The notes under the pieces: generated by a model
Seen by the model: the letters and a program-made list of their open reading frames with translations, nothing else
The model's database searches: none
What the model was told of the DNA's origin: nothing
Position numbers and translations under genes: made by a program
DNA from: Podarcis erhardii
Taxonomy: Eukaryota
Length of the DNA: 64,000 bases
Assembly (NCBI GenBank): GCA_964252035.1
Contig: OZ176201.1
Direction: 5' to 3' (one strand)
Shown here: in pieces, positions 9,755 to 24,099 of the stretch
Position numbering within the stretch: position 1 is the first letter of the stretch
How the letters are laid out: each line of letters starts with the position of its first letter

Positions 9755-10839
9755 GCCAAATTTGCATTTATTTTGTTCTCTATTACATTAACGAAAGATA
9801 AAATAAAAATAAAAGCCATAGCTACCAGCAGTTTGTTTTCTGGATGTGATTTCTCTGTGGCTTTGAACAGTCCCAGGGCTAGAAGACATTCATCTCCATG
9901 AGGTCCTAATGAAATCCAGCTAGTCACAATGTCTTTTGATAGCCTTGACACTCTTCCCTCTGTCAGTTGCTGTATGAATTATTTGTTGTTTCTGAGCAAG
10001 TCTTATGAGCGTCCCTCTGTGAGACACACAGCTTCCCAGAGCTGGAAATATTTTGTGGCTCTCTTTCATCATAGTGTTATTCACATCCGACTCATAAGAC
10101 GTCAGGGACGGCATTTTCTGATATCACAGAATTGTTTCGTGTTGCTTGCTCTGGAACTCTTAATGACAAACAGATTCATTCAGGGTGTGTGCACATTACT
10201 ACCTTAAGAGCAGAGTGAAGTTGTTTTTTTCAATCTGTTTCACAGCCCATCTGCCCGTCCACCCACCTCCCCCCCCCCACCATCTGGTTACATCAACATG
10301 GCTTCATTAGTGTCGGATTCATTTCTGTTTATGCACCTGCCATGGGGCATTGACAGGGTGATGATATATTTACAATGGTGTTCACACCTTGGCTAAAGAC
10401 AAATTAGGAACAGCTTACAGACTTCAGTCGGTGTGAAGCTGGTTTGAGAAACACATCAAATGGTAGAATCTTATTAAAAAGCAGAGGATACATATGCATT
10501 TTGGATAAGGTTGTGTGAACATGGATTAAAGACCCAGCATTAGAAACACAGTGAGTGCACAGTAAACAGGTCTGTGAACACATCCTCATAATCTAGAATA
10601 GTAAATTTGTGCATTTACACTTGTAGCCAGCAAAAGGTAGTTGTGCAAGTACGTATCTCCATGATTTGTAGCAGCTCCACAAGAGTTTCCACTTCCCTCT
10701 TGTTTTAACAATAGCAACAATATAATGGGTTTCTGCCACCATGACAAGCCTTTTAAATTAAATTGATAAAATTAAGCAAGTTTGGGAGAAAACCAGTAAT
10801 GGAGTTCTCTGTGAAAGAGCAGCAGGCTTAGTTCTGGTA

Positions 10840-11065
10840 CAGTGGTACCTCGGGTTAAGAACTTAATTCGTTCTGGAGGTCCGTTCTTAACCTGAAACTG
10901 TTCTTAACCTGAGATACCACTTTAGCTAATGGGGCCTCCCGCCGCCACCACACCACCGCCACACATTTTCTGTTCTCATCCTGAAGCAAAGTTCTAAACC
11001 CGAAGTACTATTTCTGGGTTAGCGGAGTCTGTAACCTGAAGCGTCTGTAACCTGAGGTACCAGTG
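10840..11065. mobile_element. Tc1/mariner (pogo/Tigger-like) MITE
   Basis: TIRs cagtggtacctc/gaggtaccagtg flanked by TA on both sides. Confidence 0.85.
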
Positions 11066-11127
11066 TACTGAGAACATATTATCTCAGAGGTGCCAGGTCC
11101 CACACTGCCCTCCAAGTCCCCATAAGT

Positions 11128-11263
11128 CAGGCATAGGCAAAATTGGCCCTCCAGATGTTTTGGGACTACAACTCCCATGATCCCCAGCTAACAGGACCAG
11201 TGGTCAGGGATGATGGGAATTGTAGTCCCAAAACATCTGGAGGGCCAAGTTTGCCTACGCCTG
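11128..11263. mobile_element. hAT MITE with perfect 8-bp TSD
   Basis: TIRs caggcataggcaaa/tttgcctacgcctg; TSD ccataagt at 11120-11127 and 11264-11271. Confidence 0.9.
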
Positions 11264-12212
11264 CCATAAGTCATAAGTTCTGGTTAGTAGACTTAAAGTT
11301 CTAGTAAAAAGGCAAATAGATCTCACATGCCTGAAGTGTGAATTTTGAAGGATAGCTGTGTTTTGGTCTGCATATTGTTTCAAGTTCAAGTTTGATGGAT
11401 TCACCTTTAAATGTGAACTGAATTAGATTTCTCCTCCATCACTAAGGTATCATTTGTGTTCTTTAACTAGTATTGGGAGCCATTGCCCACTCCTATGAAC
11501 TGCTATGTGAATGCCCATCTCCTGAGCCCTGGGCTATAACAGATTATAAACATGCAGTTTTAAAACCAACTTATTTTTTTGCTACTTGTTTGGTGTCTGC
11601 TGAGACATTAGCAGGAAGGTTTCAGAAAGTAAGTTATGGTCTGCATGCAATGCACGGCGGGAATTCCTCTCCTCTCCTGCCTCTCTTACCCGTGAAAGTT
11701 TCTGCTATTATAAATTTGATGGAGTCTTTAAGGTGTCATGGGACTCTTTATTGCTTTTGCTGAAGCAAAACAACAACCCCCCCACTCCCCGGAAACTGTA
11801 GCAATTTGTAGTTTTCCTTGAGCTTTCTCAAAGACCTTAGTCATTCCCCTAAGGAGCTGAAGACTTATCTTCACTTGCAGTTCCTCAAAGCCATTTTGAA
11901 ATGTGTCTGCGCTGCTGGGCTAATTCACTGACAATCTCTATGTGTATTTTAAAATCTCATCCTAGAGTGACAATGAGTGAGCAGCCCACAGGGCAAAATC
12001 AGCTTGTCTTTGAAATTTTCCATAGGCAAATGCAGGGGTGAGCATTCAGGCAGTAGTAGGCAGTAGCTGCAGATTGTCCATTTCTTAGCAATGAACCCTC
12101 TGAGAATTTCTTTTAGATGAATTCTCTCAATTTTCCTATCATTTTCATCACCGGGGCTGTAGTCATATGGCTCCTTAGTTTACCTAGATGTAGGCCTCAT
12201 AGAAGACAGTGG

Positions 12213-12450: not shown

Positions 12451-13258
12451 GACATAGCATAAAATGCAGGATTTGTGATATGTGCTTCAGAACTCTTTTT
12501 ATTATTTTCCTGCATCTACTACATATTTTGGAAAGCTGTTTGTCCATTTAATATGCATTTGGACACCTCAGAACAGATCGTAAGCAAATTTGTTTTGTTT
12601 TTGTAAGTCACTTTGGGTTCACCTTTCTGAAAAAAGCAACTAAATAAGTAAATAAATAGAATAATAATTTTGCATTATGGTTCCTGAAATCAAGGAGCAA
12701 GAATCCATCTATGCTTGGGTGCAATTGGACTCCATTTTGAATCAAGATGGTGGATCAAACCTTTCAAAACTACACTGATCTTTACCACTGATTCCAAAAC
12801 TGCATTGATTTTTTGGTCTTAGAATTCCCAAACAACACTAGGTACAAGGCTGCTAGTGTTTTATATATGCAATTTATAATACAAACATACCCATTTACTA
12901 TTCATCTTTTTCTTGTTATCTATATTACATATCTAAGAGAAACAATAGCTCCATAAAAGTAGAAATATAGAAATCAACACTGTAATATGAATCATACATC
13001 TATTTTGTAACATGAACCAAAACAGAATCAGTTCAAATGCTGAATGGGAACTAAACTTATATTGACCTGAACATCCAAACTGCTAAACTCAAAGTGGAAC
13101 TGAGCTACAATATTTAGCAATGCTTTTCACTGGGGGGATATCCATTAGTACATTGTGCCACTTCTAATCTTTTGTGACTGCAAACAAAGGAAACAAAGTA
13201 TCCCCAAAGTTTATTACCAGAAAACTCAACCAATTCCCTAGTAACATTCTATATATAT

Positions 13259-14046
13259 TGTCACAGCCACCCAGGTGGGTCCCAGCTCACGAGAGACCTT
13301 ACTCCGTTATAGTTTACTTACAGGAAAAGTTTATTGAAGATAATTGCTTCTTTCACAGTTCAGCATTGTGGCTGTACGTCTGTCACGTTAGACCGCCGAA
13401 GTCCCCCTCTGACTCCTCCCCTCCTCCACACCAACTTAATAGCCTGGCTCTAGACCACCTCTTCCTCTCCTTTCTTTTCCGCAGGGTCTTTCTGCCCCCC
13501 TGGGTTCTCTCTTTCCGGGATTCGCCTGAGGCTGAATCCTCTGCCGCCTCCTGCCCCCTCCTTCTGGCTTTGGGGCCGGGCTCCTCCTCTGAGCTTTCCC
13601 CACTTCCGCGCGCCTCTATGTTTGAACTTGGCGCGCGTACGTTGCTTTTGACCTTTCCTTCGTCCTCTATACTGCCCCCTGTTCCACTCTCTACCCTTTC
13701 CGGCTGAACACCTTGCTCCAACCCCCTCTCTCTATTTTCTCCTGTTCCTCCTCCCTCCGAGAGGCTGACAACTCCACCCCCTTTACTCCGTTCCGGCTGA
13801 GACCCCTCTGACAGCGTCTGTGCTTCACTGGGCTTTCTCCCCTCCTTCCCTGACTTTTCACAGCTTCTCTCTTCTCCTGCTTTTCGCCTGATCATGCTAG
13901 CTCCCTTTTGGGAATCCTCTGACTCACTGCTTAGGCTCATAGATTCCCTTCGAATTCCGTCATCTTCTTCCTCGTCTCTCTCTCCCTCCTCCCACTCGCT
14001 TTCCGTCTCCTCTGCCATCTCCTCACTTCTCCCAGAAACCCTGACA
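13259..14046 (-). repeat. 3' LTR (788 bp)
   Basis: Direct repeat of 19010-19797 with no difference found by eye; AATAAA on - strand at 13335-13330. Confidence 0.97.
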
Positions 14047-14486
14047 TCCATCCCCCCCTCGAAGCCCCCCCTTCCCCCCTCCCGGTCGCTGGGTGCAGGT
14101 TGAGGGAAATGTGGTTCTTCCTGGGTCGGTTCAGGATACCGGGTGTCCACGTCAATCTTCTCCTCTGGCAGCTCCGTATACGTGTGTTCGAACTCGGGTT
14201 CCCCCCCTGAAGGCATCACAGTCTCTTCCTCCCTCACTGCTTCTCCTGGCGCTGCCTGCCAAGGACCTATCATCCACCTCTGACTCCATACCTCCCTTGG
14301 CTGATCCACCCACCAATAAGGGTTTGTCTCTCCCCCCCCCCAGGCGGGGAACCCTGGTCGGGCTTGTTTTGGGCGTAGAGCCCTCGGGCGAGGAGAAACC
14401 CCCGAACGTGCTGCCCGACAAAGTGGGCGTGAAAAGCCAATCATCAAAATACTCCTCGGGCATGGGTTTGTGCGGAAAAATTGCAT
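13383..14486 (-). CDS. Extra ORF / Pol-tail frame spanning the pol 3' end, PPT and U3: acidic low-complexity protein ending in a basic patch
   Basis: 367-codon open frame; E/D/S/G-rich; RKTLRKRKERKR near the C-terminus; TGA at 13385-13383. Expression is not demonstrated. Confidence 0.6.
   Translation of the reverse strand: MQFFRTNPCPRSILMIGFSRPLCRAARSGVSPRPRALRPKQARPGFPAWGGGETNPYWWVDQPREVWSQRWMIGPWQAAPGEAVREEETVMPSGGEPEFEHTYTELPEEKIDVDTRYPEPTQEEPHFPQPAPSDREGGRGGFEGGMDVRVSGRSEEMAEETESEWEEGERDEEEDDGIRRESMSLSSESEDSQKGASMIRRKAGEERSCEKSGKEGRKPSEAQTLSEGSQPERSKGGGVVSLSEGGGTGENRERGLEQGVQPERVESGTGGSIEDEGKVKSNVRAPSSNIEARGSGESSEEEPGPKARRRGQEAAEDSASGESRKERTQGGRKTLRKRKERKRWSRARLLSWCGGGEESEGDFGGLT
14047..14060 (-). 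other. Polypurine tract
   Basis: GAGGGGGGGATGGA on - strand directly abuts the TG of the 3' LTR. Confidence 0.85.
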
Positions 14487-17400
14487 GAAACTCCTCCTTC
14501 AACAGGGGTTCGTCCAAAGCGTAATCCGGCACCCAGCTATTTGCAGAGACTGGAGTGCCTTCCCTGGCGAGAAAATATTCAACTCCCTCCTCCCCCCATC
14601 GTGAATCCAGTATCTCTGTGACCTCATTAAGAGGTTCTGGTCTTGGCGACTCCCCTCTCTCAGGCGCCCTTCTACGTGGCTCTGGAGGTGCTCCTGACTC
14701 TTGAAACCTGTGTGGGGCTTTGTAGGGAGTGAGCACCGACCTATGAAAGACCGGGTGCACCCTGGAGCCCTCCGGAAGGGCTAGGCGAAAAGCCACCGGA
14801 TTGATCTTAGCCTCAACTTGATATGGTCCTAGCTGCCTGTGTTCTAACTTCTTTTTGGCCAACGACCTGGCCGGCATCGCGTGGGCTGCTAACCATACCC
14901 AGTCCCCAACCTGAATGTCTTCCCCCACCCTTCTGTGTTTGTCGGCTTGCACCTTATACGCCTGCTTTGCCAGCTCCAAATGTCTCCGCAGCTCCTCGTG
15001 CACCTCTTGCAACTCTGCTGCAAACTGGTCGGCATTTTGAGGTCCCCCCCCTTCAGGTGCTGTAAAGCTCGGGAAGGTTCTGGGATGACGTCCATAGTTC
15101 GCGAAGAAAGGCGTCACCCCGGTGGATGCGTGCTTCGTGTTGTTGTAGGCGAACTCAGCCATCGGCAGGTAGTCCACCCACGCCGCGGGTCGCTGGTTGG
15201 CGTAACACCGTAGGTACTGCTGCATGATCGCGTTGACCCTCTCCGCTTGACCGTTGGTCTGTGGATGCCTCGCCGACGTCAGGTTGATCTTGACGTGTAA
15301 GATACCCAGAAGCTTCCGCCAGAAAGTGGAAACAAATTGGCGCCCCCTGTCGGACAAGACGGACTGCGGTAGTCCATGCACTCTGAAGACGTGATCGATG
15401 AAGAGCTTTGCGGTCTGTTCTGCCGTCGCCACCTTGGCACAAGGAATGAAGTGCGCCATCTTGGTGAACAAGTCCACAACCACTAACACCGCCGTCTTAC
15501 CTCTGGAGCTGGGCAGGTCTGTAACAAAGTCCAACGCTACCCTCTCCCACGGTTGCTGCGGTGTCTCCAGCGGTTCTAACAATCCCGCCTGCTTCTGATG
15601 CACTGGTTTGGACCTCTGGCAGATATCGCACCTGGCTACGTAGTCCGCCACCTCTCCTCTCATCTGGGGCCACCAAAAGTCCCTTGCCACCAACTCCATC
15701 GTCTTCTCTTTGCCGAAATGGCCCGCACTCGGGGCATCGTGCAATTGTTGCAAAACCGTGGCGCGAAGCTCGTCGGTGGGCACGTAAAGGGCGCCCTTGC
15801 GAGTCAAAAGTCCATCCTGCAACTGAAACTCATTGTTGTCAGGCGACCCTCTGCGGAGCTCCTCCATCTTGGATTGTGCAAACTGATCCTCTTGCAGCGC
15901 GCGTCGCACCGCGTCCAGGTCGACTGCGATGGTAGCGCACGTCCACGCCTGCGGTGCGAAAATGTACTTTGCTGCGATTGGAGCTACTTCCTCCAGGTAT
16001 TGAGGCTTTCGGGACAGCGCGTCTGCTATAACATTGGAGTCTCCAGGGATGTATTCTATTTTGAAATCGAAATCCGCAAAGAATTCCGCCCAGCGCATGT
16101 GTCGTTGGGTTTGCAATTTAGCCGTCCGCCAATACTCCAAGTTCTTGTGATCCGTGCGGACCTGCACCGTGTGCTTGGCTCCTATCAAGAAGTGTCGCCA
16201 CGCTCTGAAAGCTGCATGAATGGCCAACAACTCCCTGTCCCATATGGTGTAGTTGCGCTCCGTCTTGCTGAGCTTGCGGGAGTAGAATGCACCCGGTCTC
16301 CAGTTGCCTTGCGAATCCTCTTGCAAGAGGACGGCCCCAACTGCTCTGTCTGATGCATCTGTCTCTACCCGCATGGGCCTGCCAGGATTCACGTGCAGCA
16401 GCTGCTCCTCGGAGGCGAAAAGGCTTTTAAGCTTCCGAAAGGATCGCTCTGCTTGTTCGGTCCAGACGAACTTCTTCTTCTTGGAACTGAGGGTGTCAGT
16501 GATTGCCGCCGTCGCGTTTGCAAAACCTTTAATAAACTTGCGATAAAAATTGGCAAAGCCGATGAACCTCTGGACCTCCTTCCGATTTCGAGGGCTCTTC
16601 CAGTCCAACAGCGCTTGGACTTTAGTCTTGTCCATGGCCAGTCCCTCGTCGGACAGCTTGTAGCCAAGGAAATCTACCTCTCTCACATCAAACTGGCACT
16701 TCTCCAACTTGGCGTACAGCCTGTGTTCCTTCAGCCTCTGCAGAACTTCCTTCACGTCCTTATCGTGATCCTCTGGCGATTCCGAGAAAATCAGGATATC
16801 GTCGAGAAAACAGACACACTTCTTGTAGAGGAGACCTGCCAGGACGTGATGCATGAATGCTTGGAAAACATGGCTGCCATTTTGTAGACCGAAGGGCATA
16901 ACCCTGTATTCGTACGTGCCCAAAGGAGTGAACATGGCCGTCTTCCACTCGTCGCCCTTCCTGATGCGGATGAGGTTGTAAGCTCCACGTAAATCCAGCT
17001 TGGTAAAAATCTTCCCCCTCCTGACTGTAGCCAAAAGGTCGTCAATTTTGGGCATGGGGAAAGCCTTGGGCTTAGTTAGTCTGTTTATGAACCGGTAGTC
17101 CACAATGAGCCTCTTCTGGGGCGTGTCTTTCTTTTTCACAAAGAAAACAGGACTGCCTCCCGCTGCTTTAGATTCCTGGATGAATCCGCGCTTGAGGTTG
17201 TGTTCTATGAACTCCCGAAGCTCTTGCAGCTCGTCTTCCGACATGGAGTACAGCTTGGCAGTTGGCAACTGCGCGCCTGGCACTAAGTCAATCGCGCAGT
17301 CGTAAGGTCTGTGAGGCGGCAATTTGTCAGCTTCCTTTTCGCAGAAAACCTCCAAGAACTCCGCGTACTTGTGAGGAACCGCTTGCACCATACTCAGATG

Positions 17401-17931
17401 CCGCTGCTGTTCGTCTTCTCCTCCTTGATCGGTTTGGATGCAATTCTGGGCGCAATACGATGAACAAAAGGTGATCTGCCTCTGGTACCAAGCAACCGCG
17501 GGACTGTGCCTGTCCAGCCAACTCATGCCCAACACGATGGGCGTGTCCGATAAGTGGGTGACATTGAAACTAATAAGCTCTCGATGGTCTCCAATTTGCA
17601 TCATCATGGGAGGGGTTTGCTGCACCACTTGCCCCCCCAGCAACTTCCTGCCGTCTACCGTGACCACGTTCAGAGGCGTCGTTGCAGGCAGGAGCGCTAT
17701 GTTATGCTGCTTGACGAACTGTAATCCCACGAAATCGGCGTTGCTTCCCGAATCGATGGTTGTTGGAACCTCGAGAAGCCGCCCATCAGGCAGCTGGAGT
17801 GTTGCTGTGAGTAAAACTGCTGGTTTGGGAGGTAAAGGGTCCATGTGCTGCAAGGATGCTGGGGACTTCTCTACAGATCCGCCTGGCTGAGCCCCAGTAG
17901 CTCTGCTTCCAGCCAGGCACTGCAGTTTCCC
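14152..17931 (-). CDS. Pol (protease-RT-RNase H-integrase-chromodomain), reached from gag by a -1 frameshift
   Basis: IDSGS protease; KLDLRGAY and FLDDILIF RT; TDASD, RELLAI and TDHKNL RNase H; HDAPSAGH...CDIC, LDFVT, SDRG, ERVN and GPY integrase; C-terminal chromodomain fold. The ORF-track start at 18048 lies upstream of the slippery site. Confidence 0.95.
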   Translation of the reverse strand, partial: GKLQCLAGSRATGAQPGGSVEKSPASLQHMDPLPPKPAVLLTATLQLPDGRLLEVPTTIDSGSNADFVGLQFVKQHNIALLPATTPLNVVTVDGRKLLGGQVVQQTPPMMMQIGDHRELISFNVTHLSDTPIVLGMSWLDRHSPAVAWYQRQITFCSSYCAQNCIQTDQGGEDEQQRHLSMVQAVPHKYAEFLEVFCEKEADKLPPHRPYDCAIDLVPGAQLPTAKLYSMSEDELQELREFIEHNLKRGFIQESKAAGGSPVFFVKKKDTPQKRLIVDYRFINRLTKPKAFPMPKIDDLLATVRRGKIFTKLDLRGAYNLIRIRKGDEWKTAMFTPLGTYEYRVMPFGLQNGSHVFQAFMHHVLAGLLYKKCVCFLDDILIFSESPEDHDKDVKEVLQRLKEHRLYAKLEKCQFDVREVDFLGYKLSDEGLAMDKTKVQALLDWKSPRNRKEVQRFIGFANFYRKFIKGFANATAAITDTLSSKKKKFVWTEQAERSFRKLKSLFASEEQLLHVNPGRPMRVETDASDRAVGAVLLQEDSQGNWRPGAFYSRKLSKTERNYTIWDRELLAIHAAFRAWRHFLIGAKHTVQVRTDHKNLEYWRTAKLQTQRHMRWAEFFADFDFKIEYIPGDSNVIADALSRKPQYLEEVAPIAAKYIFAPQAWTCATIAVDLDAVRRALQEDQFAQSKMEELRRGSPDNNEFQLQDGLLTRKGALYVPTDELRATVLQQLHDAPSAGHFGKEKTMELVARDFWWPQMRGEVADYVARCDICQRSKPVHQKQAGLLEPLETPQQPWERVALDFVTDLPSSRGKTAVLVVVDLFTKMAHFIPCAKVATAEQTAKLFIDHVFRVHGLPQSVLSDRGRQFVSTFWRKLLGILHVKINLTSARHPQTNGQAERVNAIMQQYLRCYANQRPAAWVDYLPMAEFAYNNTKHASTGVTPFFANYGRHPRTFPSFTAPEGGGPQNADQFAAELQEVHEELRRHLELAKQAYKVQADKHRRVGEDIQVGDWVWLAAHAMPARSLAKKKLEHRQLGPYQVEAKINPVAFRLALPEGSRVHPVFHRSVLTPYKAPHRFQESGAPPEPRRRAPERGESPRPEPLNEVTEILDSRWGEEGVEYFLAREGTPVSANSWVPDYALDEPLLKEEFHAIFPHKPMPEEYFDDWLFTPTLSGSTFGGFSSPEGSTPKTSPTRVPRLGGGRDKPLLVGGSAKGGMESEVDDRSLAGSARRSSEGGRDCDAFRGGTRVRTHVYGAARGED

Positions 17932-18947
17932 TGAAGCTGCTCCTCTGATTGCACCTCTGCTGTCACAGTTGCTAGTGCTGCAGTGTGCTTCTGGAGCCTC
18001 TGGGGGCACTCTTTCGCCATATGGTGTGCACTGTCGCAGATGTAACACTTCCTGGTCCCTCTAGGAGGCTTCGCTTTGGCTGCAGCAGGGATGGGGCTCT
18101 GGGATGGCTTTTGAGCCCTAGCACCACCAATCTCCATTGGCTCCTCGCCTTCCTTCCCCATTGGTGAGGGGTGCGCACGGCTGAAATCCCTGTGCACAAA
18201 AGGGAGAGCTTTTGCTTGCGCGCGCGCTTGGGGCCCCCCCTCCTCGTGCCACGGACGTCCCTCATGTCGAATTCCTATAGCCAAAGCCCGTTGCACCACG
18301 TCTTCCAGGGTCTGGGGTCTGTCCCCCCTTGCGATCTCATCCTTGACGGAGGGGCTCAATCCCTCCCAAAAAAGATCCCTGACCGGTAGACTGTCCTTCG
18401 GCCAATCTAAGGCGGTGAGCAATGCAAAAAATTTAGAATGATATTGGCGTACAGTGGCTCTCCCCTGCCTCAGCCCGTGCATCTGCCGGCGCGCAATGTC
18501 CTTATCCACAGAGGATTGAAAACAAGCATCCATTGCCTTGATAAACGCATCTGCATTGCGACGGGCTGGTCCATCTTCGCGCCACAGATTGCGTAGCCAA
18601 GCCCTGGCCTCCCCATGCAGGTGCGAAACAATAAATCCCACTCTCTCCTCCTCATCTCTAAAATCATGACGGAGTAAATGCAGTGCATACACGACATCTG
18701 CCCTGAAGTTGGGATAGTCTTGCAAGTTGCCATTAAAATGCGAAACTAGGGCACCCCCCCTCCTTCCAAGCGCAATGCCCTCCGCTCTGGAGCCCGGGGT
18801 CCCCGCCTTGTCCGCATTTTCCCACCTTGCTTGCAAATCCTGGCACGCTTTCTCCAAGTCAGCATTCTTCTTCTGCGAAGCAATGACTGCCGTTGTGAGA
18901 GTGGTAATCTGATCCCGGAGTGCAGCCAGCTGTTCCTCAGCACTCAT
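17871..18947 (-). CDS. Gag (N-terminal coiled coil, retrotransposon gag domain, CCHC zinc knuckle)
   Basis: 358-aa intact ORF starting 62 nt after the 5' LTR; CYICDSAHHMAKEC = Cx2Cx4Hx4C. Confidence 0.95.
   Translation of the reverse strand: MSAEEQLAALRDQITTLTTAVIASQKKNADLEKACQDLQARWENADKAGTPGSRAEGIALGRRGGALVSHFNGNLQDYPNFRADVVYALHLLRHDFRDEEERVGFIVSHLHGEARAWLRNLWREDGPARRNADAFIKAMDACFQSSVDKDIARRQMHGLRQGRATVRQYHSKFFALLTALDWPKDSLPVRDLFWEGLSPSVKDEIARGDRPQTLEDVVQRALAIGIRHEGRPWHEEGGPQARAQAKALPFVHRDFSRAHPSPMGKEGEEPMEIGGARAQKPSQSPIPAAAKAKPPRGTRKCYICDSAHHMAKECPQRLQKHTAALATVTAEVQSEEQLQGNCSAWLEAELLGLSQADL
17881..17931 (-). promoter_or_regulatory. -1 ribosomal frameshift signal: G GGA AAC heptamer, 6-nt spacer, 9-bp stem
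   Basis: GGGAAAC at 17931-17925 in the gag frame (CAG GGA AAC); GCCTGGCTG (17918-17910) pairs with CAGCCAGGC (17889-17881). Confidence 0.85.
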
Positions 18948-18996
18948 GGCTGCCCCGTTCGTGAGCTTCGCAAAAAAAAATTTTTGCTTTCAGAGG

Positions 18997-19007
18997 GAGG
19001 GGGACTT
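18997..19007 (-). other. Self-priming primer-binding site (not tRNA type)
   Basis: AAGTCCCCCTC, 2 nt after the LTR end, is the exact reverse complement of GAGGGGGACTT at 19160-19150; no TGG-type tRNA PBS. Confidence 0.85.
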
Positions 19008-19009
19008 TC

Positions 19010-19797
19010 TGTCACAGCCACCCAGGTGGGTCCCAGCTCACGAGAGACCTTACTCCGTTATAGTTTACTTACAGGAAAAGTTTATTGAAGATAATTGCTT
19101 CTTTCACAGTTCAGCATTGTGGCTGTACGTCTGTCACGTTAGACCGCCGAAGTCCCCCTCTGACTCCTCCCCTCCTCCACACCAACTTAATAGCCTGGCT
19201 CTAGACCACCTCTTCCTCTCCTTTCTTTTCCGCAGGGTCTTTCTGCCCCCCTGGGTTCTCTCTTTCCGGGATTCGCCTGAGGCTGAATCCTCTGCCGCCT
19301 CCTGCCCCCTCCTTCTGGCTTTGGGGCCGGGCTCCTCCTCTGAGCTTTCCCCACTTCCGCGCGCCTCTATGTTTGAACTTGGCGCGCGTACGTTGCTTTT
19401 GACCTTTCCTTCGTCCTCTATACTGCCCCCTGTTCCACTCTCTACCCTTTCCGGCTGAACACCTTGCTCCAACCCCCTCTCTCTATTTTCTCCTGTTCCT
19501 CCTCCCTCCGAGAGGCTGACAACTCCACCCCCTTTACTCCGTTCCGGCTGAGACCCCTCTGACAGCGTCTGTGCTTCACTGGGCTTTCTCCCCTCCTTCC
19601 CTGACTTTTCACAGCTTCTCTCTTCTCCTGCTTTTCGCCTGATCATGCTAGCTCCCTTTTGGGAATCCTCTGACTCACTGCTTAGGCTCATAGATTCCCT
19701 TCGAATTCCGTCATCTTCTTCCTCGTCTCTCTCTCCCTCCTCCCACTCGCTTTCCGTCTCCTCTGCCATCTCCTCACTTCTCCCAGAAACCCTGACA
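19010..19797 (-). repeat. 5' LTR (788 bp)
   Basis: Direct repeat of 13259-14046; contains TATA-like box, Inr and AATAAA (19086-19081) on - strand. Confidence 0.97.
19158..19192 (-). promoter_or_regulatory. LTR core promoter: TATTAA plus Inr, predicted TSS at A19161
   Basis: TATTAA at 19192-19187; GTCAGA fits the BBCABW Inr with A+1 31 nt downstream of the first T. Confidence 0.7.
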
Positions 19798-19946
19798 TAT
19801 ATGATACAGGCTTTCAATAAAAGCAAAATACTTTTCATCTGTCATTTTGAGTTGCTGTAAAAACCTAGTCCTGTAGTGCCACTTAGAGGATAGATCTAGT
19901 AACTGTGAACAAACCTTTTGTGATATGCTGCTATTCACTGCAACTA

Positions 19947-22802: not shown

Positions 22803-23239
22803 TGCTGCTGGAAGGGTAAGTCCGCGTTAAATAGGAAAGAGAAAGCGAGCGGGGCATGTTGAGGTCCAAGCTGCCATAGAGAAGCCTGGCGATCCCCTAC
22901 CCCACTCCAAACACCGGGCAGAGTGCTGCCCTCACATGTTTTTCTAAGAAGCCGGGGGCGGGGGGGGGGCTGATTCAGCTAAAATCCCGGTCGGGGGTGG
23001 GGCTTGCGGGGTCCATTCCGCCCCTCCTCCCCACATGCTGAGCACCGCAGAGGCGGGCAACGCTTCACCTTTTGGCTCTCCCTCGCGGCGCCAGGCCCGG
23101 GTGCCTGGAGCGAGCGAAGGCAGCCCTCCGCCCCCTCGCCGCCCTTCGCCTCCTCCCCTGGCGCGCCCTCCTCTTCCTTTCCCTTCCCTCCCGAGGGGGC
23201 GGTGCGGACGCTGCTCGCCCCTCCCACCCCGGCTTGGCC

Positions 23240-23381
23240 CGCTCTGCAGCCGCCGCCGCCGCCGCCGCCGCTTGCTCGCTGCCTCCTGAATTTCTTCCGG
23301 CGGGCTTTGGCGCGCCTCTCGGACTGGAGCCGGCGCGGACGTGCGGGAGGCAGCCGTGGAGCGGGGCGCGCAGCGGGCGCC
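23240..23381 (+). other. SFXN1: Probable non-coding exon 1 of SFXN1 (start approximate)
   Basis: Donor GCC|GTGAGT at 23381/23382 inside the CpG island; no ATG in the segment; exon 2 has only 13 nt before its ATG. Confidence 0.65.
23249..23269 (+). repeat. (GCC)7 repeat
   Basis: Seen directly. Confidence 0.95.
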
Positions 23382-24099
23382 GTGAGTAACCCTGGGCAGC
23401 AACCAGAAGCACCTCTCTCTCCCCATCCCTGGCCGCTCGGGAGGTAGGCGCTCCTTCCACGGCGCTTCACCCAGCCAGCAGCCCCAAAGTGGGGGGTGAC
23501 CCTCCCCGCTCTCCATCCCCCGAAGCGGGTGCAGGGAGGGAGGCCGGCTTGGCGCCCCGCAGCTGCTGCTGCTGCGGCTCTGCAGAGGACGGAGAGCTAC
23601 GCCTCCCTTTCTCCCCGGTGCCCGTCTCTCGAGCGCGCTAGCGGCATCCTCTTCCCCCGGGGTGCATCTGCCTACAACAGTAGCCTCTCCCCCAAAATAC
23701 AATACATAGGAACCAAGGTCCCTTCGGCCTCCCAATAAAATATTTGAGTGCCCCCCCCCGCGGTTGATGGGCATTTCCACTCCAACGGTACGCGTGCGCC
23801 GTGTCTTGTGATCGATGATGCGGGGCGGGGCATACATGGGCCCCCCAATATTTTATTCAAGTTGGCACCCTTGATGCAATGTGGCATCGCAATGCCCATT
23901 TAGCTAACCCACTCCAGCATTCCTGTCCTCCTGTATACCGTGGGCCCAGTGAATAACCCAAAATGTCCCTTTCGGGTATGTGTGCGTTCCCAGTAGATGG
24001 ATCTAAAAGTATTGGTTTAGTTTTTTAAAAAAGAATAAATAAGAGAAAGAGACGTTCGTTTGGGTACTGAGCGCTTTCTCCCTTCTTCCAGCTGCCTGA

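What the first reader, a model, noticed from the sequence alone, without database searches (positions are those of the whole stretch)
14332..14341. A G10 run decides whether Pol fuses to the U3 ORF
Seen: Pol reads CTG GGG GGG GGG AGA (LGGG-R) and ends 60 codons later; the U3 ORF is in the +1 frame. With G9, Pol continues LGGG-ETNPYWWVDQ... to 13383, giving integrase a tail of about 360 aa beyond the chromodomain. Upstream of the run the Pol frame looks like real protein (PEEYFDDWLF...STFGGF) and the other frame looks like a shadow (R/P-rich); downstream the pattern reverses. Inference: a homopolymer assembly error, a slippage mutation in this copy, or a second recoding/slippage switch producing short- and long-tailed integrase.
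Basis: partly seen in the sequence, partly recalled or inferred. Interest (0 to 1): 0.7.

Follow-up and report, generated by a model that had tools for sequence, protein, structure and literature searches.

The report
Frame break in lizard retrotransposon integrase tail
A run of ten G's in a very young lizard-type retrotransposon puts its polymerase gene one base out of step with a long, conserved tail that relatives encode in one piece, which looks like an ordinary slippage lesion or sequencing slip, not a designed switch.

Summary
A G10 run lies at 14341-14332 on the minus strand. It sits inside an intact-looking 6.5-kb Ty3/gypsy chromovirus (13259-19797) with 100% identical 788-bp LTRs and a 5-bp target duplication. 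Upstream of the run, homology supports the Pol frame. Downstream, it supports the +1 frame, which stays open for 315 codons through the polypurine tract and all of U3, ending 24 nt into R.

This tail is real coding sequence. No stop-free frame appeared in 3000 shuffles. Omega is 0.30-0.45 in that frame and 0.6-1.4 in the other two. About 30 Podarcis relatives, including two uninterrupted ORFs at DNA level, read chromodomain and tail as one ORF. Their spacing between two anchor motifs is always 42 codons. None has a G run there (at most G5), and only the window copy is out of register.

The fused long-tailed integrase is therefore the family norm. The break is most likely a copy-specific homopolymer slippage mutation, or else a consensus error. 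A programmed second recoding site is unlikely (about 0.07). No sibling copies could be found, so it is not excluded.

The more interesting by-product is a disordered integrase tail encoded by U3. It is known only from this lizard family and parallels plant CRM elements.

The parts
19010..19797 (-). 5' LTR, 788 bp, TGTCA...TGACA ends
   Evidence: Position-by-position comparison at an offset of 5751 shows 100% identity to the 3' LTR.
13259..14046 (-). 3' LTR, 788 bp. U3 is about 14046-13410, R begins about 13409, and U5 runs to 13259.
19798..19802 (-). Target-site duplication ATATA. The second copy is at 13254-13258.
17871..18947 (-). gag ORF, 358 aa (Ty3 capsid, Retrotrans_gag, weak zf-CCHC)
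   Evidence: Relatives' gag proteins are also 358 aa.
17925..17931 (-). G_GGA_AAC heptamer, in register with the gag frame, in the gag/pol overlap. It is the likely -1 frameshift site for gag-pol (inferred).
   Evidence: with frame arithmetic
14152..18048 (-). Pol frame as it reads in this copy: PR, RT, RNase H, IN zinc finger, IN core, SH3 and a divergent chromodomain, then 59 out-of-frame codons after the run
14485..14625 (-). Divergent chromodomain at the integrase C-terminus
   Evidence: Pfam Chromo matches at E 0.0023 and 18.3 bits, below the 25.1 cut-off, over the whole profile. The same position in relative P0007 is significant.
14332..14341 (-). G10 homopolymer, the finding itself
14331..14352 (-). 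Interval in which the register changes. It lies between the last codon supported by homology in the Pol frame and the first supported in the tail frame.
13383..14330 (-). Integrase tail, 315 codons plus TGA, in the +1 frame. About 95 codons lie before the LTR and about 220 inside the 3' LTR.
14047..14060 (-). Polypurine tract abutting the 3' LTR. It lies inside the tail ORF and encodes part of the conserved EGG.GGFEGGMDVR block.
18997..19007 (-). Primer-binding site of the self-priming type, 2 nt after the 5' LTR
   Evidence: It is exactly complementary over 11 nt to 13409-13399 and 19160-19150. The pairing is kept with different letters in L002 and L001.
13399..13409 (-). Predicted first 11 nt of the transcript (start of R), 32 nt after TATTAA at 13441-13436. 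AATAAA is at 13335-13330.

Best explanation
The element is a very recently inserted Tf1/sushi-type chromovirus (Ty3/gypsy). Its closest relatives are in lacertid lizards of the genus Podarcis. In this family Pol does not stop after the chromodomain. It runs on for about 311 residues after a conserved YWW motif, through the polypurine tract and the whole of U3 of the 3' LTR, and ends a few codons into R. The tail is mostly disordered. It carries short conserved motifs: a YWWD.QPEE.WRRKW helix, an acidic SLSSESEDSQKGA serine cluster, a basic RK-rich patch, and a terminal L.WC helix. It is probably a targeting, tethering or nuclear-import appendage of integrase; that function is inferred. In the window copy the Pol frame and the tail frame are one base out of register, and the change lies in a 22-nt interval dominated by a lineage-specific G10 run. 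The most likely cause is a real, copy-specific length change of that hypermutable run. It could have arisen during the reverse transcription that made this copy, or by replication slippage afterwards. This copy would then encode an integrase that keeps its chromodomain, loses the tail, and ends in 59 meaningless residues. Shown here: the anatomy, the coding status of the tail, the continuous ORF in relatives, and the position of the break. Inferred: that the break is a mutation and not an artefact, and what the tail does.
For: The element is intact and young. The 788-bp LTRs are 100% identical and the ATATA duplication is present. gag and pol align to relatives in single frames without other breaks.

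The tail is coding. It has 0 stops against 12 and 11 in the other frames, and 0 of 3000 shuffles were stop-free. On frame-blind nucleotide alignments, omega is 0.30-0.45 in the tail frame and 0.68-1.36 in the others. This holds separately for the pre-LTR and U3 parts, where the other frames range 0.63-1.43.

Relatives are continuous. About 30 Podarcis muralis and P. lilfordi proteins read DDWLF...YWW in one frame, with 42 residues from one motif to the other. At least 16 proteins (15 of them Podarcis models) carry the full tail of 305-318 aa (353 aa in P0004, which has an internal duplication), ending in the same motif. Uninterrupted ORFs exist at DNA level in L001 8990-10159 and L003 21-1268, so the continuity is not an artefact of gene models.

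Anchor-to-anchor spacing is 126 nt in four DNA relatives and is not a multiple of three in the window. The relatives have at most a G5 run in that stretch, and only G3-G4 at the aligned position of the run.

The run is the longest homopolymer in the element. G runs break this family elsewhere too: P0001, P0124 and P0130 change frame at the polypurine-tract G runs.
Against: No reads were available, so a consensus error at the homopolymer cannot be separated from a true mutation. My preference for a mutation rests on rough prior rates from general knowledge, not on data from this assembly. No copy more than 88% identical in Pol, 74% in gag or 61% in the tail was found in any collection. The state of the run in the source lineage is therefore unknown. 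If all siblings share it, this explanation fails.
Confidence: 0.55

Rival explanations
1. Assembly or consensus error. The true genomic run length puts Pol and tail in one frame, and the copy is fully intact.
For: The only defect in an otherwise perfect element with identical LTRs lies in its longest homopolymer, within a G/A-rich stretch. Homopolymer length is the commonest residual error of long-read assemblies (general knowledge). The spacing is otherwise invariant in every relative.
Against: Nothing in the window tells which sequencing technology was used. Other G7-G8 runs in the element are in frame. For a polished high-accuracy assembly, the per-run error rate is lower than the chance of a real change in a G10 tract over the element's possible age (my estimate, not measured).
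Confidence: 0.28
2. Programmed recoding. The G10 run would be a second slippage site, acting by ribosomal +1/-2 frameshifting or by polymerase stuttering on the run. This lineage would then make a short-tailed integrase by default and a long-tailed one at low frequency.
For: A homopolymer of ten allows re-pairing in any register. The element already appears to use one frameshift site for gag-pol. The run is lineage-specific, so it could be a recent innovation. Polymerase slippage at homopolymers is used by some RNA viruses (general knowledge).
Against: No relative needs it; all have one continuous ORF and at most a G5 run in that stretch (G3-G4 at the aligned position). The 132 nt downstream fold no better than shuffles (z 0.10). 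A canonical -1 slip would reach stops about 20 codons later, so the tail needs the rarer +1/-2 direction. The 59-codon zero-frame extension shows no meaningful similarity to any relative.
Confidence: 0.07
3. The downstream ORF is an independent accessory gene, translated from its own start (ATG at 14486) or from a spliced RNA, and the run is irrelevant.
For: In this copy an ATG-initiated 367-codon ORF exists. Some retroviruses carry accessory genes overlapping U3 (general knowledge).
Against: Upstream of the run the +1 frame has no homology support, whereas the Pol frame does. In relatives the tail is in frame with Pol, at a fixed 42-codon spacing from the chromodomain region. Stand-alone proteins found by the exhaustive search are only ORF fragments from short contigs.
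Confidence: 0.03

Closest known systems
Plant centromeric (CRM clade, group A) chromoviruses
   Same: [quoted passage not shown]
   Different: In CRM elements the LTR-encoded CR motif takes the place of the chromodomain. Here a divergent chromodomain lies upstream of the polypurine tract. The extra tail is about 311 aa, mostly disordered, fills the whole of U3, and shows no detectable similarity to anything outside this lizard family.
Tf1/sushi group of chromoviruses (fungal Tf1, vertebrate sushi-ichi)
   Same: It has the Ty3/gypsy domain order and an integrase chromodomain. [quoted passage not shown] The principle is from general knowledge. The complementarity and its covariation are shown.
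   Different: To my knowledge, those elements end Pol at or soon after the chromodomain. The U3-encoded tail is an addition.
Retroviral genes overlapping U3 (MMTV sag, lentiviral nef)
   Same: Protein-coding sequence shares DNA with the U3 promoter region of the 3' LTR (general knowledge).
   Different: Those are separate accessory genes expressed from their own mRNAs. Here the U3-encoded sequence is a C-terminal extension of integrase.
Polymerase-slippage or frameshift sites at homopolymers (potyvirus P3N-PIPO, paramyxovirus P/V, filovirus GP)
   Same: A homopolymer separates two reading frames that both matter (general knowledge).
   Different: Those runs are conserved across the virus group, and the second frame is reachable only by slippage. 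Here the run is absent from all relatives, which use one frame.

Membership tests
Ty3/gypsy LTR retrotransposon (Metaviridae), chromovirus branch | Paired LTRs with TG...CA ends and a target-site duplication | tested here: met
   The 788-bp LTRs are 100% identical with TGTCA...TGACA ends, and the duplication is ATATA.
Ty3/gypsy LTR retrotransposon (Metaviridae), chromovirus branch | gag followed by pol in the order PR-RT-RNase H-IN | tested here: met
   Pfam gives Ty3_capsid and Retrotrans_gag (plus a weak, sub-threshold zf-CCHC match) in gag, and RVP_2, RVT_1, RT_RNaseH, Integrase_H2C2, rve and SH3_Tf2-1 in pol, in that order.
Ty3/gypsy LTR retrotransposon (Metaviridae), chromovirus branch | Chromodomain at the integrase C-terminus | tested here: inconclusive
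   Pfam Chromo scores 18.3 bits (E 0.0023), below the 25.1 cut-off, but covers positions 2-51 of 53. The homologous segment of the more distant relative P0007 passes at 36.9 bits.
Tf1/sushi self-priming group | [quoted passage not shown] | tested here: met
   An 11-nt exact complement lies 2 nt after the 5' LTR and 32 nt after a TATTAA. Relatives keep the pairing with other letters. This is in silico only; the transcription start was not mapped.
Chromoviruses whose pol ORF extends into the 3' LTR (CRM group A architecture) | ORF continues through the polypurine tract into the 3' LTR | tested here: met
   The LTR start TGTCAGGG lies inside uninterrupted ORFs in L003 and L001. In the window this holds only in the shifted frame.
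Chromoviruses whose pol ORF extends into the 3' LTR (CRM group A architecture) | LTR-encoded CR motif | tested here: not met
   A profile of the tail found only four proteins among 1.84 billion representatives. All four are ORF fragments whose sequences align to this family's tail, three of them sharing its C-terminal motifs; none resembles a plant CRM integrase. Two come from Logan contigs, and the origin of the other two was not looked up. There was no Pfam or PDB match. No direct alignment to CR motifs was made.
Programmed frameshift or polymerase-slippage site | Slippery run conserved among relatives that need the second frame | tested here: not met
   Relatives have at most a G5 run in the stretch (G3-G4 at the aligned position) and need no shift.
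Programmed frameshift or polymerase-slippage site | Stimulatory RNA structure downstream | tested here: not met
   The minimum free energy of 132 nt downstream is -35.1 kcal/mol against a shuffle mean of -35.4 (z 0.10). Pseudoknots were not modelled.
Programmed frameshift or polymerase-slippage site | Two products, or run-length heterogeneity in RNA | not testable with these tools
   This needs cDNA sequencing, reporter assays or proteomics.

The most novel reading that the evidence does not exclude
The G10 run could be a recent innovation of an actively transposing sublineage. It would work as a slippage switch, by polymerase stuttering or +1/-2 ribosomal shifting, that sets the ratio of short-tailed to long-tailed integrase. 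That would add a second recoding event to an LTR retrotransposon which already frameshifts at gag-pol. It would also make the U3-encoded targeting tail conditional.
Probability: 0.07. Interest if true: 0.75.

Novelty: new variant of a known kind. Interest (0 to 1): 0.3.

Why it matters
The G run itself is most likely an ordinary lesion or error. It matters mainly for annotation: this copy should be recorded as carrying a frame break in Pol, not as a Pol gene plus a separate U3 gene.

What the run revealed is more useful. A vertebrate chromovirus family has an integrase with a tail of about 311 residues under purifying selection, about 220 of them encoded by the whole of U3. The same DNA therefore has to serve as promoter, polypurine tract, LTR end and protein.

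This is the animal counterpart of the plant CRM arrangement, where the LTR-encoded integrase end is thought to direct insertion. It offers a tractable case for asking how integrase tails choose chromatin, and how dual coding and regulatory constraint shapes LTR evolution.

Tried and rejected
- **Composition artefact:** I tested whether the open +1 frame follows from purine richness. It does not; shuffles and the stop counts of the other two frames reject this.
- **Conservation from DNA-level constraint only:** This is rejected by frame-specific omega on nucleotide alignments, in both the pre-LTR and U3 parts. The polypurine-tract and TATA-overlapping blocks may still carry both kinds of constraint.
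- **Continuity in relatives as a gene-model artefact:** Tiny introns could in principle hide breaks. This is rejected by uninterrupted ORFs in raw DNA (L001, L003).
- **Search for sibling copies to tabulate run length, all without result:**
  - Exact look-ups of the window's gag and tail ORF found nothing.
  - A look-up of P0001 found nothing.
  - Word searches gave best hits of 87% with the Pol C-terminus, 61% with the tail and 74% with gag.
  - The exhaustive profile search gave four fragments.
  - A run-length-tolerant DNA pattern scan of metagenome contigs gave 0 hits.
  - Self-BLAST showed no other copy in the window.
- **Function of the tail:** There was no Pfam hit. The only PDB hit was a weak match to ribosomal protein eS17 at E 0.021, which I take as compositional. 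AlphaFold mean pLDDT was 46.5, so no fold search was run.
- **Other scans:** The Rfam scan of the window found nothing.
- **Steps not taken, by rule:** I built no read-through, consensus or mended version of Pol. The two pieces were searched apart.
- **Checks on the window:** It contains no N, and nothing in it was taken for human.

Full report
**What is at the coordinates.** On the minus strand the window reads CTG, ten G (14341-14332), then AGA. This is the longest homopolymer in the element that contains it.
- The element lies on the minus strand from 19797 to 13259.
- Its two 788-bp LTRs (19797-19010 and 14046-13259) are identical at every position. They begin TGTCA and end TGACA, and are flanked by a five-base duplication, ATATA.
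- The gag ORF (17871-18947) has Ty3 capsid and retrotransposon gag domains and a weak zinc-knuckle match.
- The pol ORF (14152-18048) has protease, reverse transcriptase, RNase H, integrase zinc finger, integrase core and the Tf2-type SH3 domain.
- After the SH3 domain comes a divergent chromodomain. Pfam Chromo scores 18.3 bits, below its cut-off, but the match spans the whole profile. The same position passes in a more distant relative.
- The surrounding DNA is AT-rich (GC 0.30-0.34 next to the element), whereas the element itself has GC 0.48-0.61.

- Pol reads ...PRLGGGR... and stops 59 codons after the run.
- The +1 frame is open from 14501 to a TGA at 13385-13383 and reads ...GGGETNPYWWVDQ....
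- Over the 945 nt after the run, the other two frames carry 12 and 11 stops.
- Shuffles of the same composition give 10-13 stops per frame, and not one of 3000 shuffles had a stop-free frame. The open frame is therefore not a side effect of the purine richness seen.

**Relatives.** The closest proteins in the 5.8-billion-protein collection are Podarcis muralis models named 'Gypsy retrotransposon integrase-like protein 1'. They are 76-87% identical over the last 400 residues of Pol.
- In tblastn against the window, six of them align in the Pol frame up to 14347-14356. Five of those continue in the +1 frame from 14339-14306. The two with complete tails reach 13404, seven codons before the stop.
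- With their 90% clusters included, about 30 proteins from P. muralis and P. lilfordi cross the junction. Every one reads from DDWLF to YWW in a single frame with exactly 42 residues from one motif to the other.
- At least 16 proteins (15 Podarcis models plus the Logan ORF P0162) carry a complete tail of 305-318 residues after YWW; P0004 has 353 because of an internal duplication. All of these end in the same motif...RKRW....L.WC.GG..S.G. The window's tail has 311 residues.
- The continuity is not an artefact of gene models. A P. muralis locus (L001) has an uninterrupted 389-codon ORF across the junction. A Logan contig (L003, run ERR12828829) is one 415-codon ORF from chromodomain to the end of the tail, 61% identical to the window's tail.

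**Where the break is.**
- In a DNA alignment with four relatives, the window is out of register by one base between invariant blocks. The relatives have only three or four G where the window has ten.
- Measured without alignment, the distance between the DDWLF and YWW anchors is 126 nt in all four relatives, and the frame then stays open. In the window the distance is not a multiple of three.
- Homology supports the Pol frame through the codon at 14355-14353, and the tail frame from the codon at 14330-14328. The change of register therefore lies in 14352-14331, a 22-nt interval of which the run is 10 nt.
- No other break was seen. P0005 aligns to Pol over 1172 residues in one frame, and gag has the family's usual 358 residues.

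**The tail is coding, including the part inside U3.**
- On nucleotide alignments made without regard to frame, Nei-Gojobori omega in the tail frame is 0.31 (window versus L003), 0.30 (L003 versus L001) and 0.46 (window versus L001). The other two frames give 0.68-1.36 and contain 9-19 stop codons.
- Split at the LTR boundary, the tail-frame omega is 0.29-0.53 for the 90 pre-LTR codons and 0.32-0.43 for the roughly 220 LTR codons. The other two frames give 0.63-1.43.
- For comparison, the chromodomain and linker just upstream give 0.10.
- The LTR start TGTCAGGG lies inside the ORF in L003 and L001 as well.

**Where U3 ends.**
- An 11-nt stretch of the LTR (13409-13399) lies 32 nt after a TATTAA. 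It is exactly complementary to 19007-18997, two bases after the 5' LTR.
- Two relatives keep this pairing with different letters. This is the signature of the self-priming used by the Tf1/sushi group (the principle is from general knowledge).
- The pairing places the start of R near 13409. U3 (14046 to about 13410) is therefore coding throughout, the stop lies 24 nt into R, and AATAAA follows at 13335-13330.
- Only the 3' copy of U3 is present in genomic RNA, so the tail can be made only from the 3' end of the transcript. In relatives that means as part of Pol (inference).

**What the tail is.**
- There is no Pfam family. The only PDB hit is a weak, probably compositional one.
- AlphaFold with the nine-sequence alignment gives a mean pLDDT of 46.5, with two short helices at residues 8-16 and 290-297.
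- An exhaustive profile search of 1.84 billion representative proteins found four hits. All four are ORF fragments whose sequences align to this family's tail, three of them sharing its C-terminal motifs. Two of them are from Logan contigs, and the origin of the other two was not looked up.
- Conserved blocks are YWWD.QPEE.WRRKW, FEH, the block over the polypurine tract and LTR start, an acidic SLSSESEDSQKGA cluster, RAPSSN, EPGPKARR, a basic RK-rich patch, and L.WC.
- I infer a disordered integrase appendage with short linear motifs for nuclear import or chromatin tethering. This rests on analogy with the LTR-encoded CR motif of plant CRM elements (PMC3059260, PMC3605345). That function is not shown.

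**Why the break is probably not programmed.**
- All relatives need no shift and lack the run.
- The 132 nt downstream fold no better than shuffles (z 0.10).
- A -1 slip would meet stops after about 20 codons, so the tail would require +1 or -2.
- The 59 zero-frame codons resemble nothing in relatives.
- G runs also break the tail elsewhere in the family. Three P. muralis models change frame at the polypurine-tract G runs.
- I could find no copy close enough to be a sibling. I therefore cannot say whether the run, or its out-of-register length, is shared by the source lineage.

**Mutation or artefact.** This cannot be settled without reads.
- From general knowledge, a G10 tract mutates orders of magnitude faster than single bases. 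Its rate may be comparable to the combined substitution rate of both LTRs.
- Given that, a length change in an element with still-identical LTRs is not improbable. A consensus error at one given run in a polished assembly is rarer.
- I therefore put a real copy-specific mutation at 0.55, an assembly error at 0.28, programmed recoding at 0.07 and an independently expressed ORF at 0.03. The remaining 0.07 is left unassigned.

**Rules observed.** The two pieces of the broken gene were searched apart. I do not state a repairing change. The window has no N, and no contig was taken for human.

Noticed in passing
window 19007-18997, 13409-13399 and 19160-19150; L002 and L001: This is a self-priming signature of the Tf1/sushi type. 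Eleven bases of the LTR, 32 nt after a TATTAA, are exactly complementary to the site 2 nt after the 5' LTR. Two relatives keep the pairing with different letters (AGATGGAGCTT and AGACGGAGC). This is covariation, and it fixes the U3/R border.
   Followed up: partly
window 17931-17925 (minus strand): A canonical-type -1 slippery heptamer, G_GGA_AAC, lies in register with the gag frame. It is 54 nt before the gag stop, inside the 178-nt gag/pol overlap. Pol is in the -1 frame relative to gag.
   Followed up: partly
proteins P0001, P0124, P0130 (Podarcis muralis), aligned to window 14092-14018: Three annotated relatives change frame at the G runs of the polypurine tract and end about 20 residues later. 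They lose the U3-encoded part of the tail. I cannot tell whether this is a shared lesion of a sublineage, a recurrent slippage or an error in that assembly.
   Followed up: no
protein P0004 residues 461-540: An internal duplication of about 40 residues repeats the YWWDDRPEEQWRRKW motif at the start of the tail.
   Followed up: no
L001 (P. muralis OZ076972.1, 21 kb): The locus is a nest of at least four copies or fragments of this family in both orientations, next to tandem repeats of about 396 bp (10187-11279 and 17826-18500). This may point to clustered insertion.
   Followed up: no
window 22900-23900: A GC-rich island (GC 0.55 against about 0.40 around it) has stacked ORFs on both strands and a 24-bp C-rich repeat. 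There is no Pfam match. It may be a CpG island or the first exon of a host gene.
   Followed up: no
protein P0009 (NCBI model 'vomeronasal type-2 receptor 26-like', P. muralis): This gene model combines receptor domains with RNase H, integrase core and SH3 of this retrotransposon family. It is probably a chimeric prediction.
   Followed up: no
window 13254-13258, 19798-19802 and flanks: The element inserted into an AT-rich, (TA)n-like stretch (target ATATA; flanks GC 0.30-0.34).
   Followed up: no
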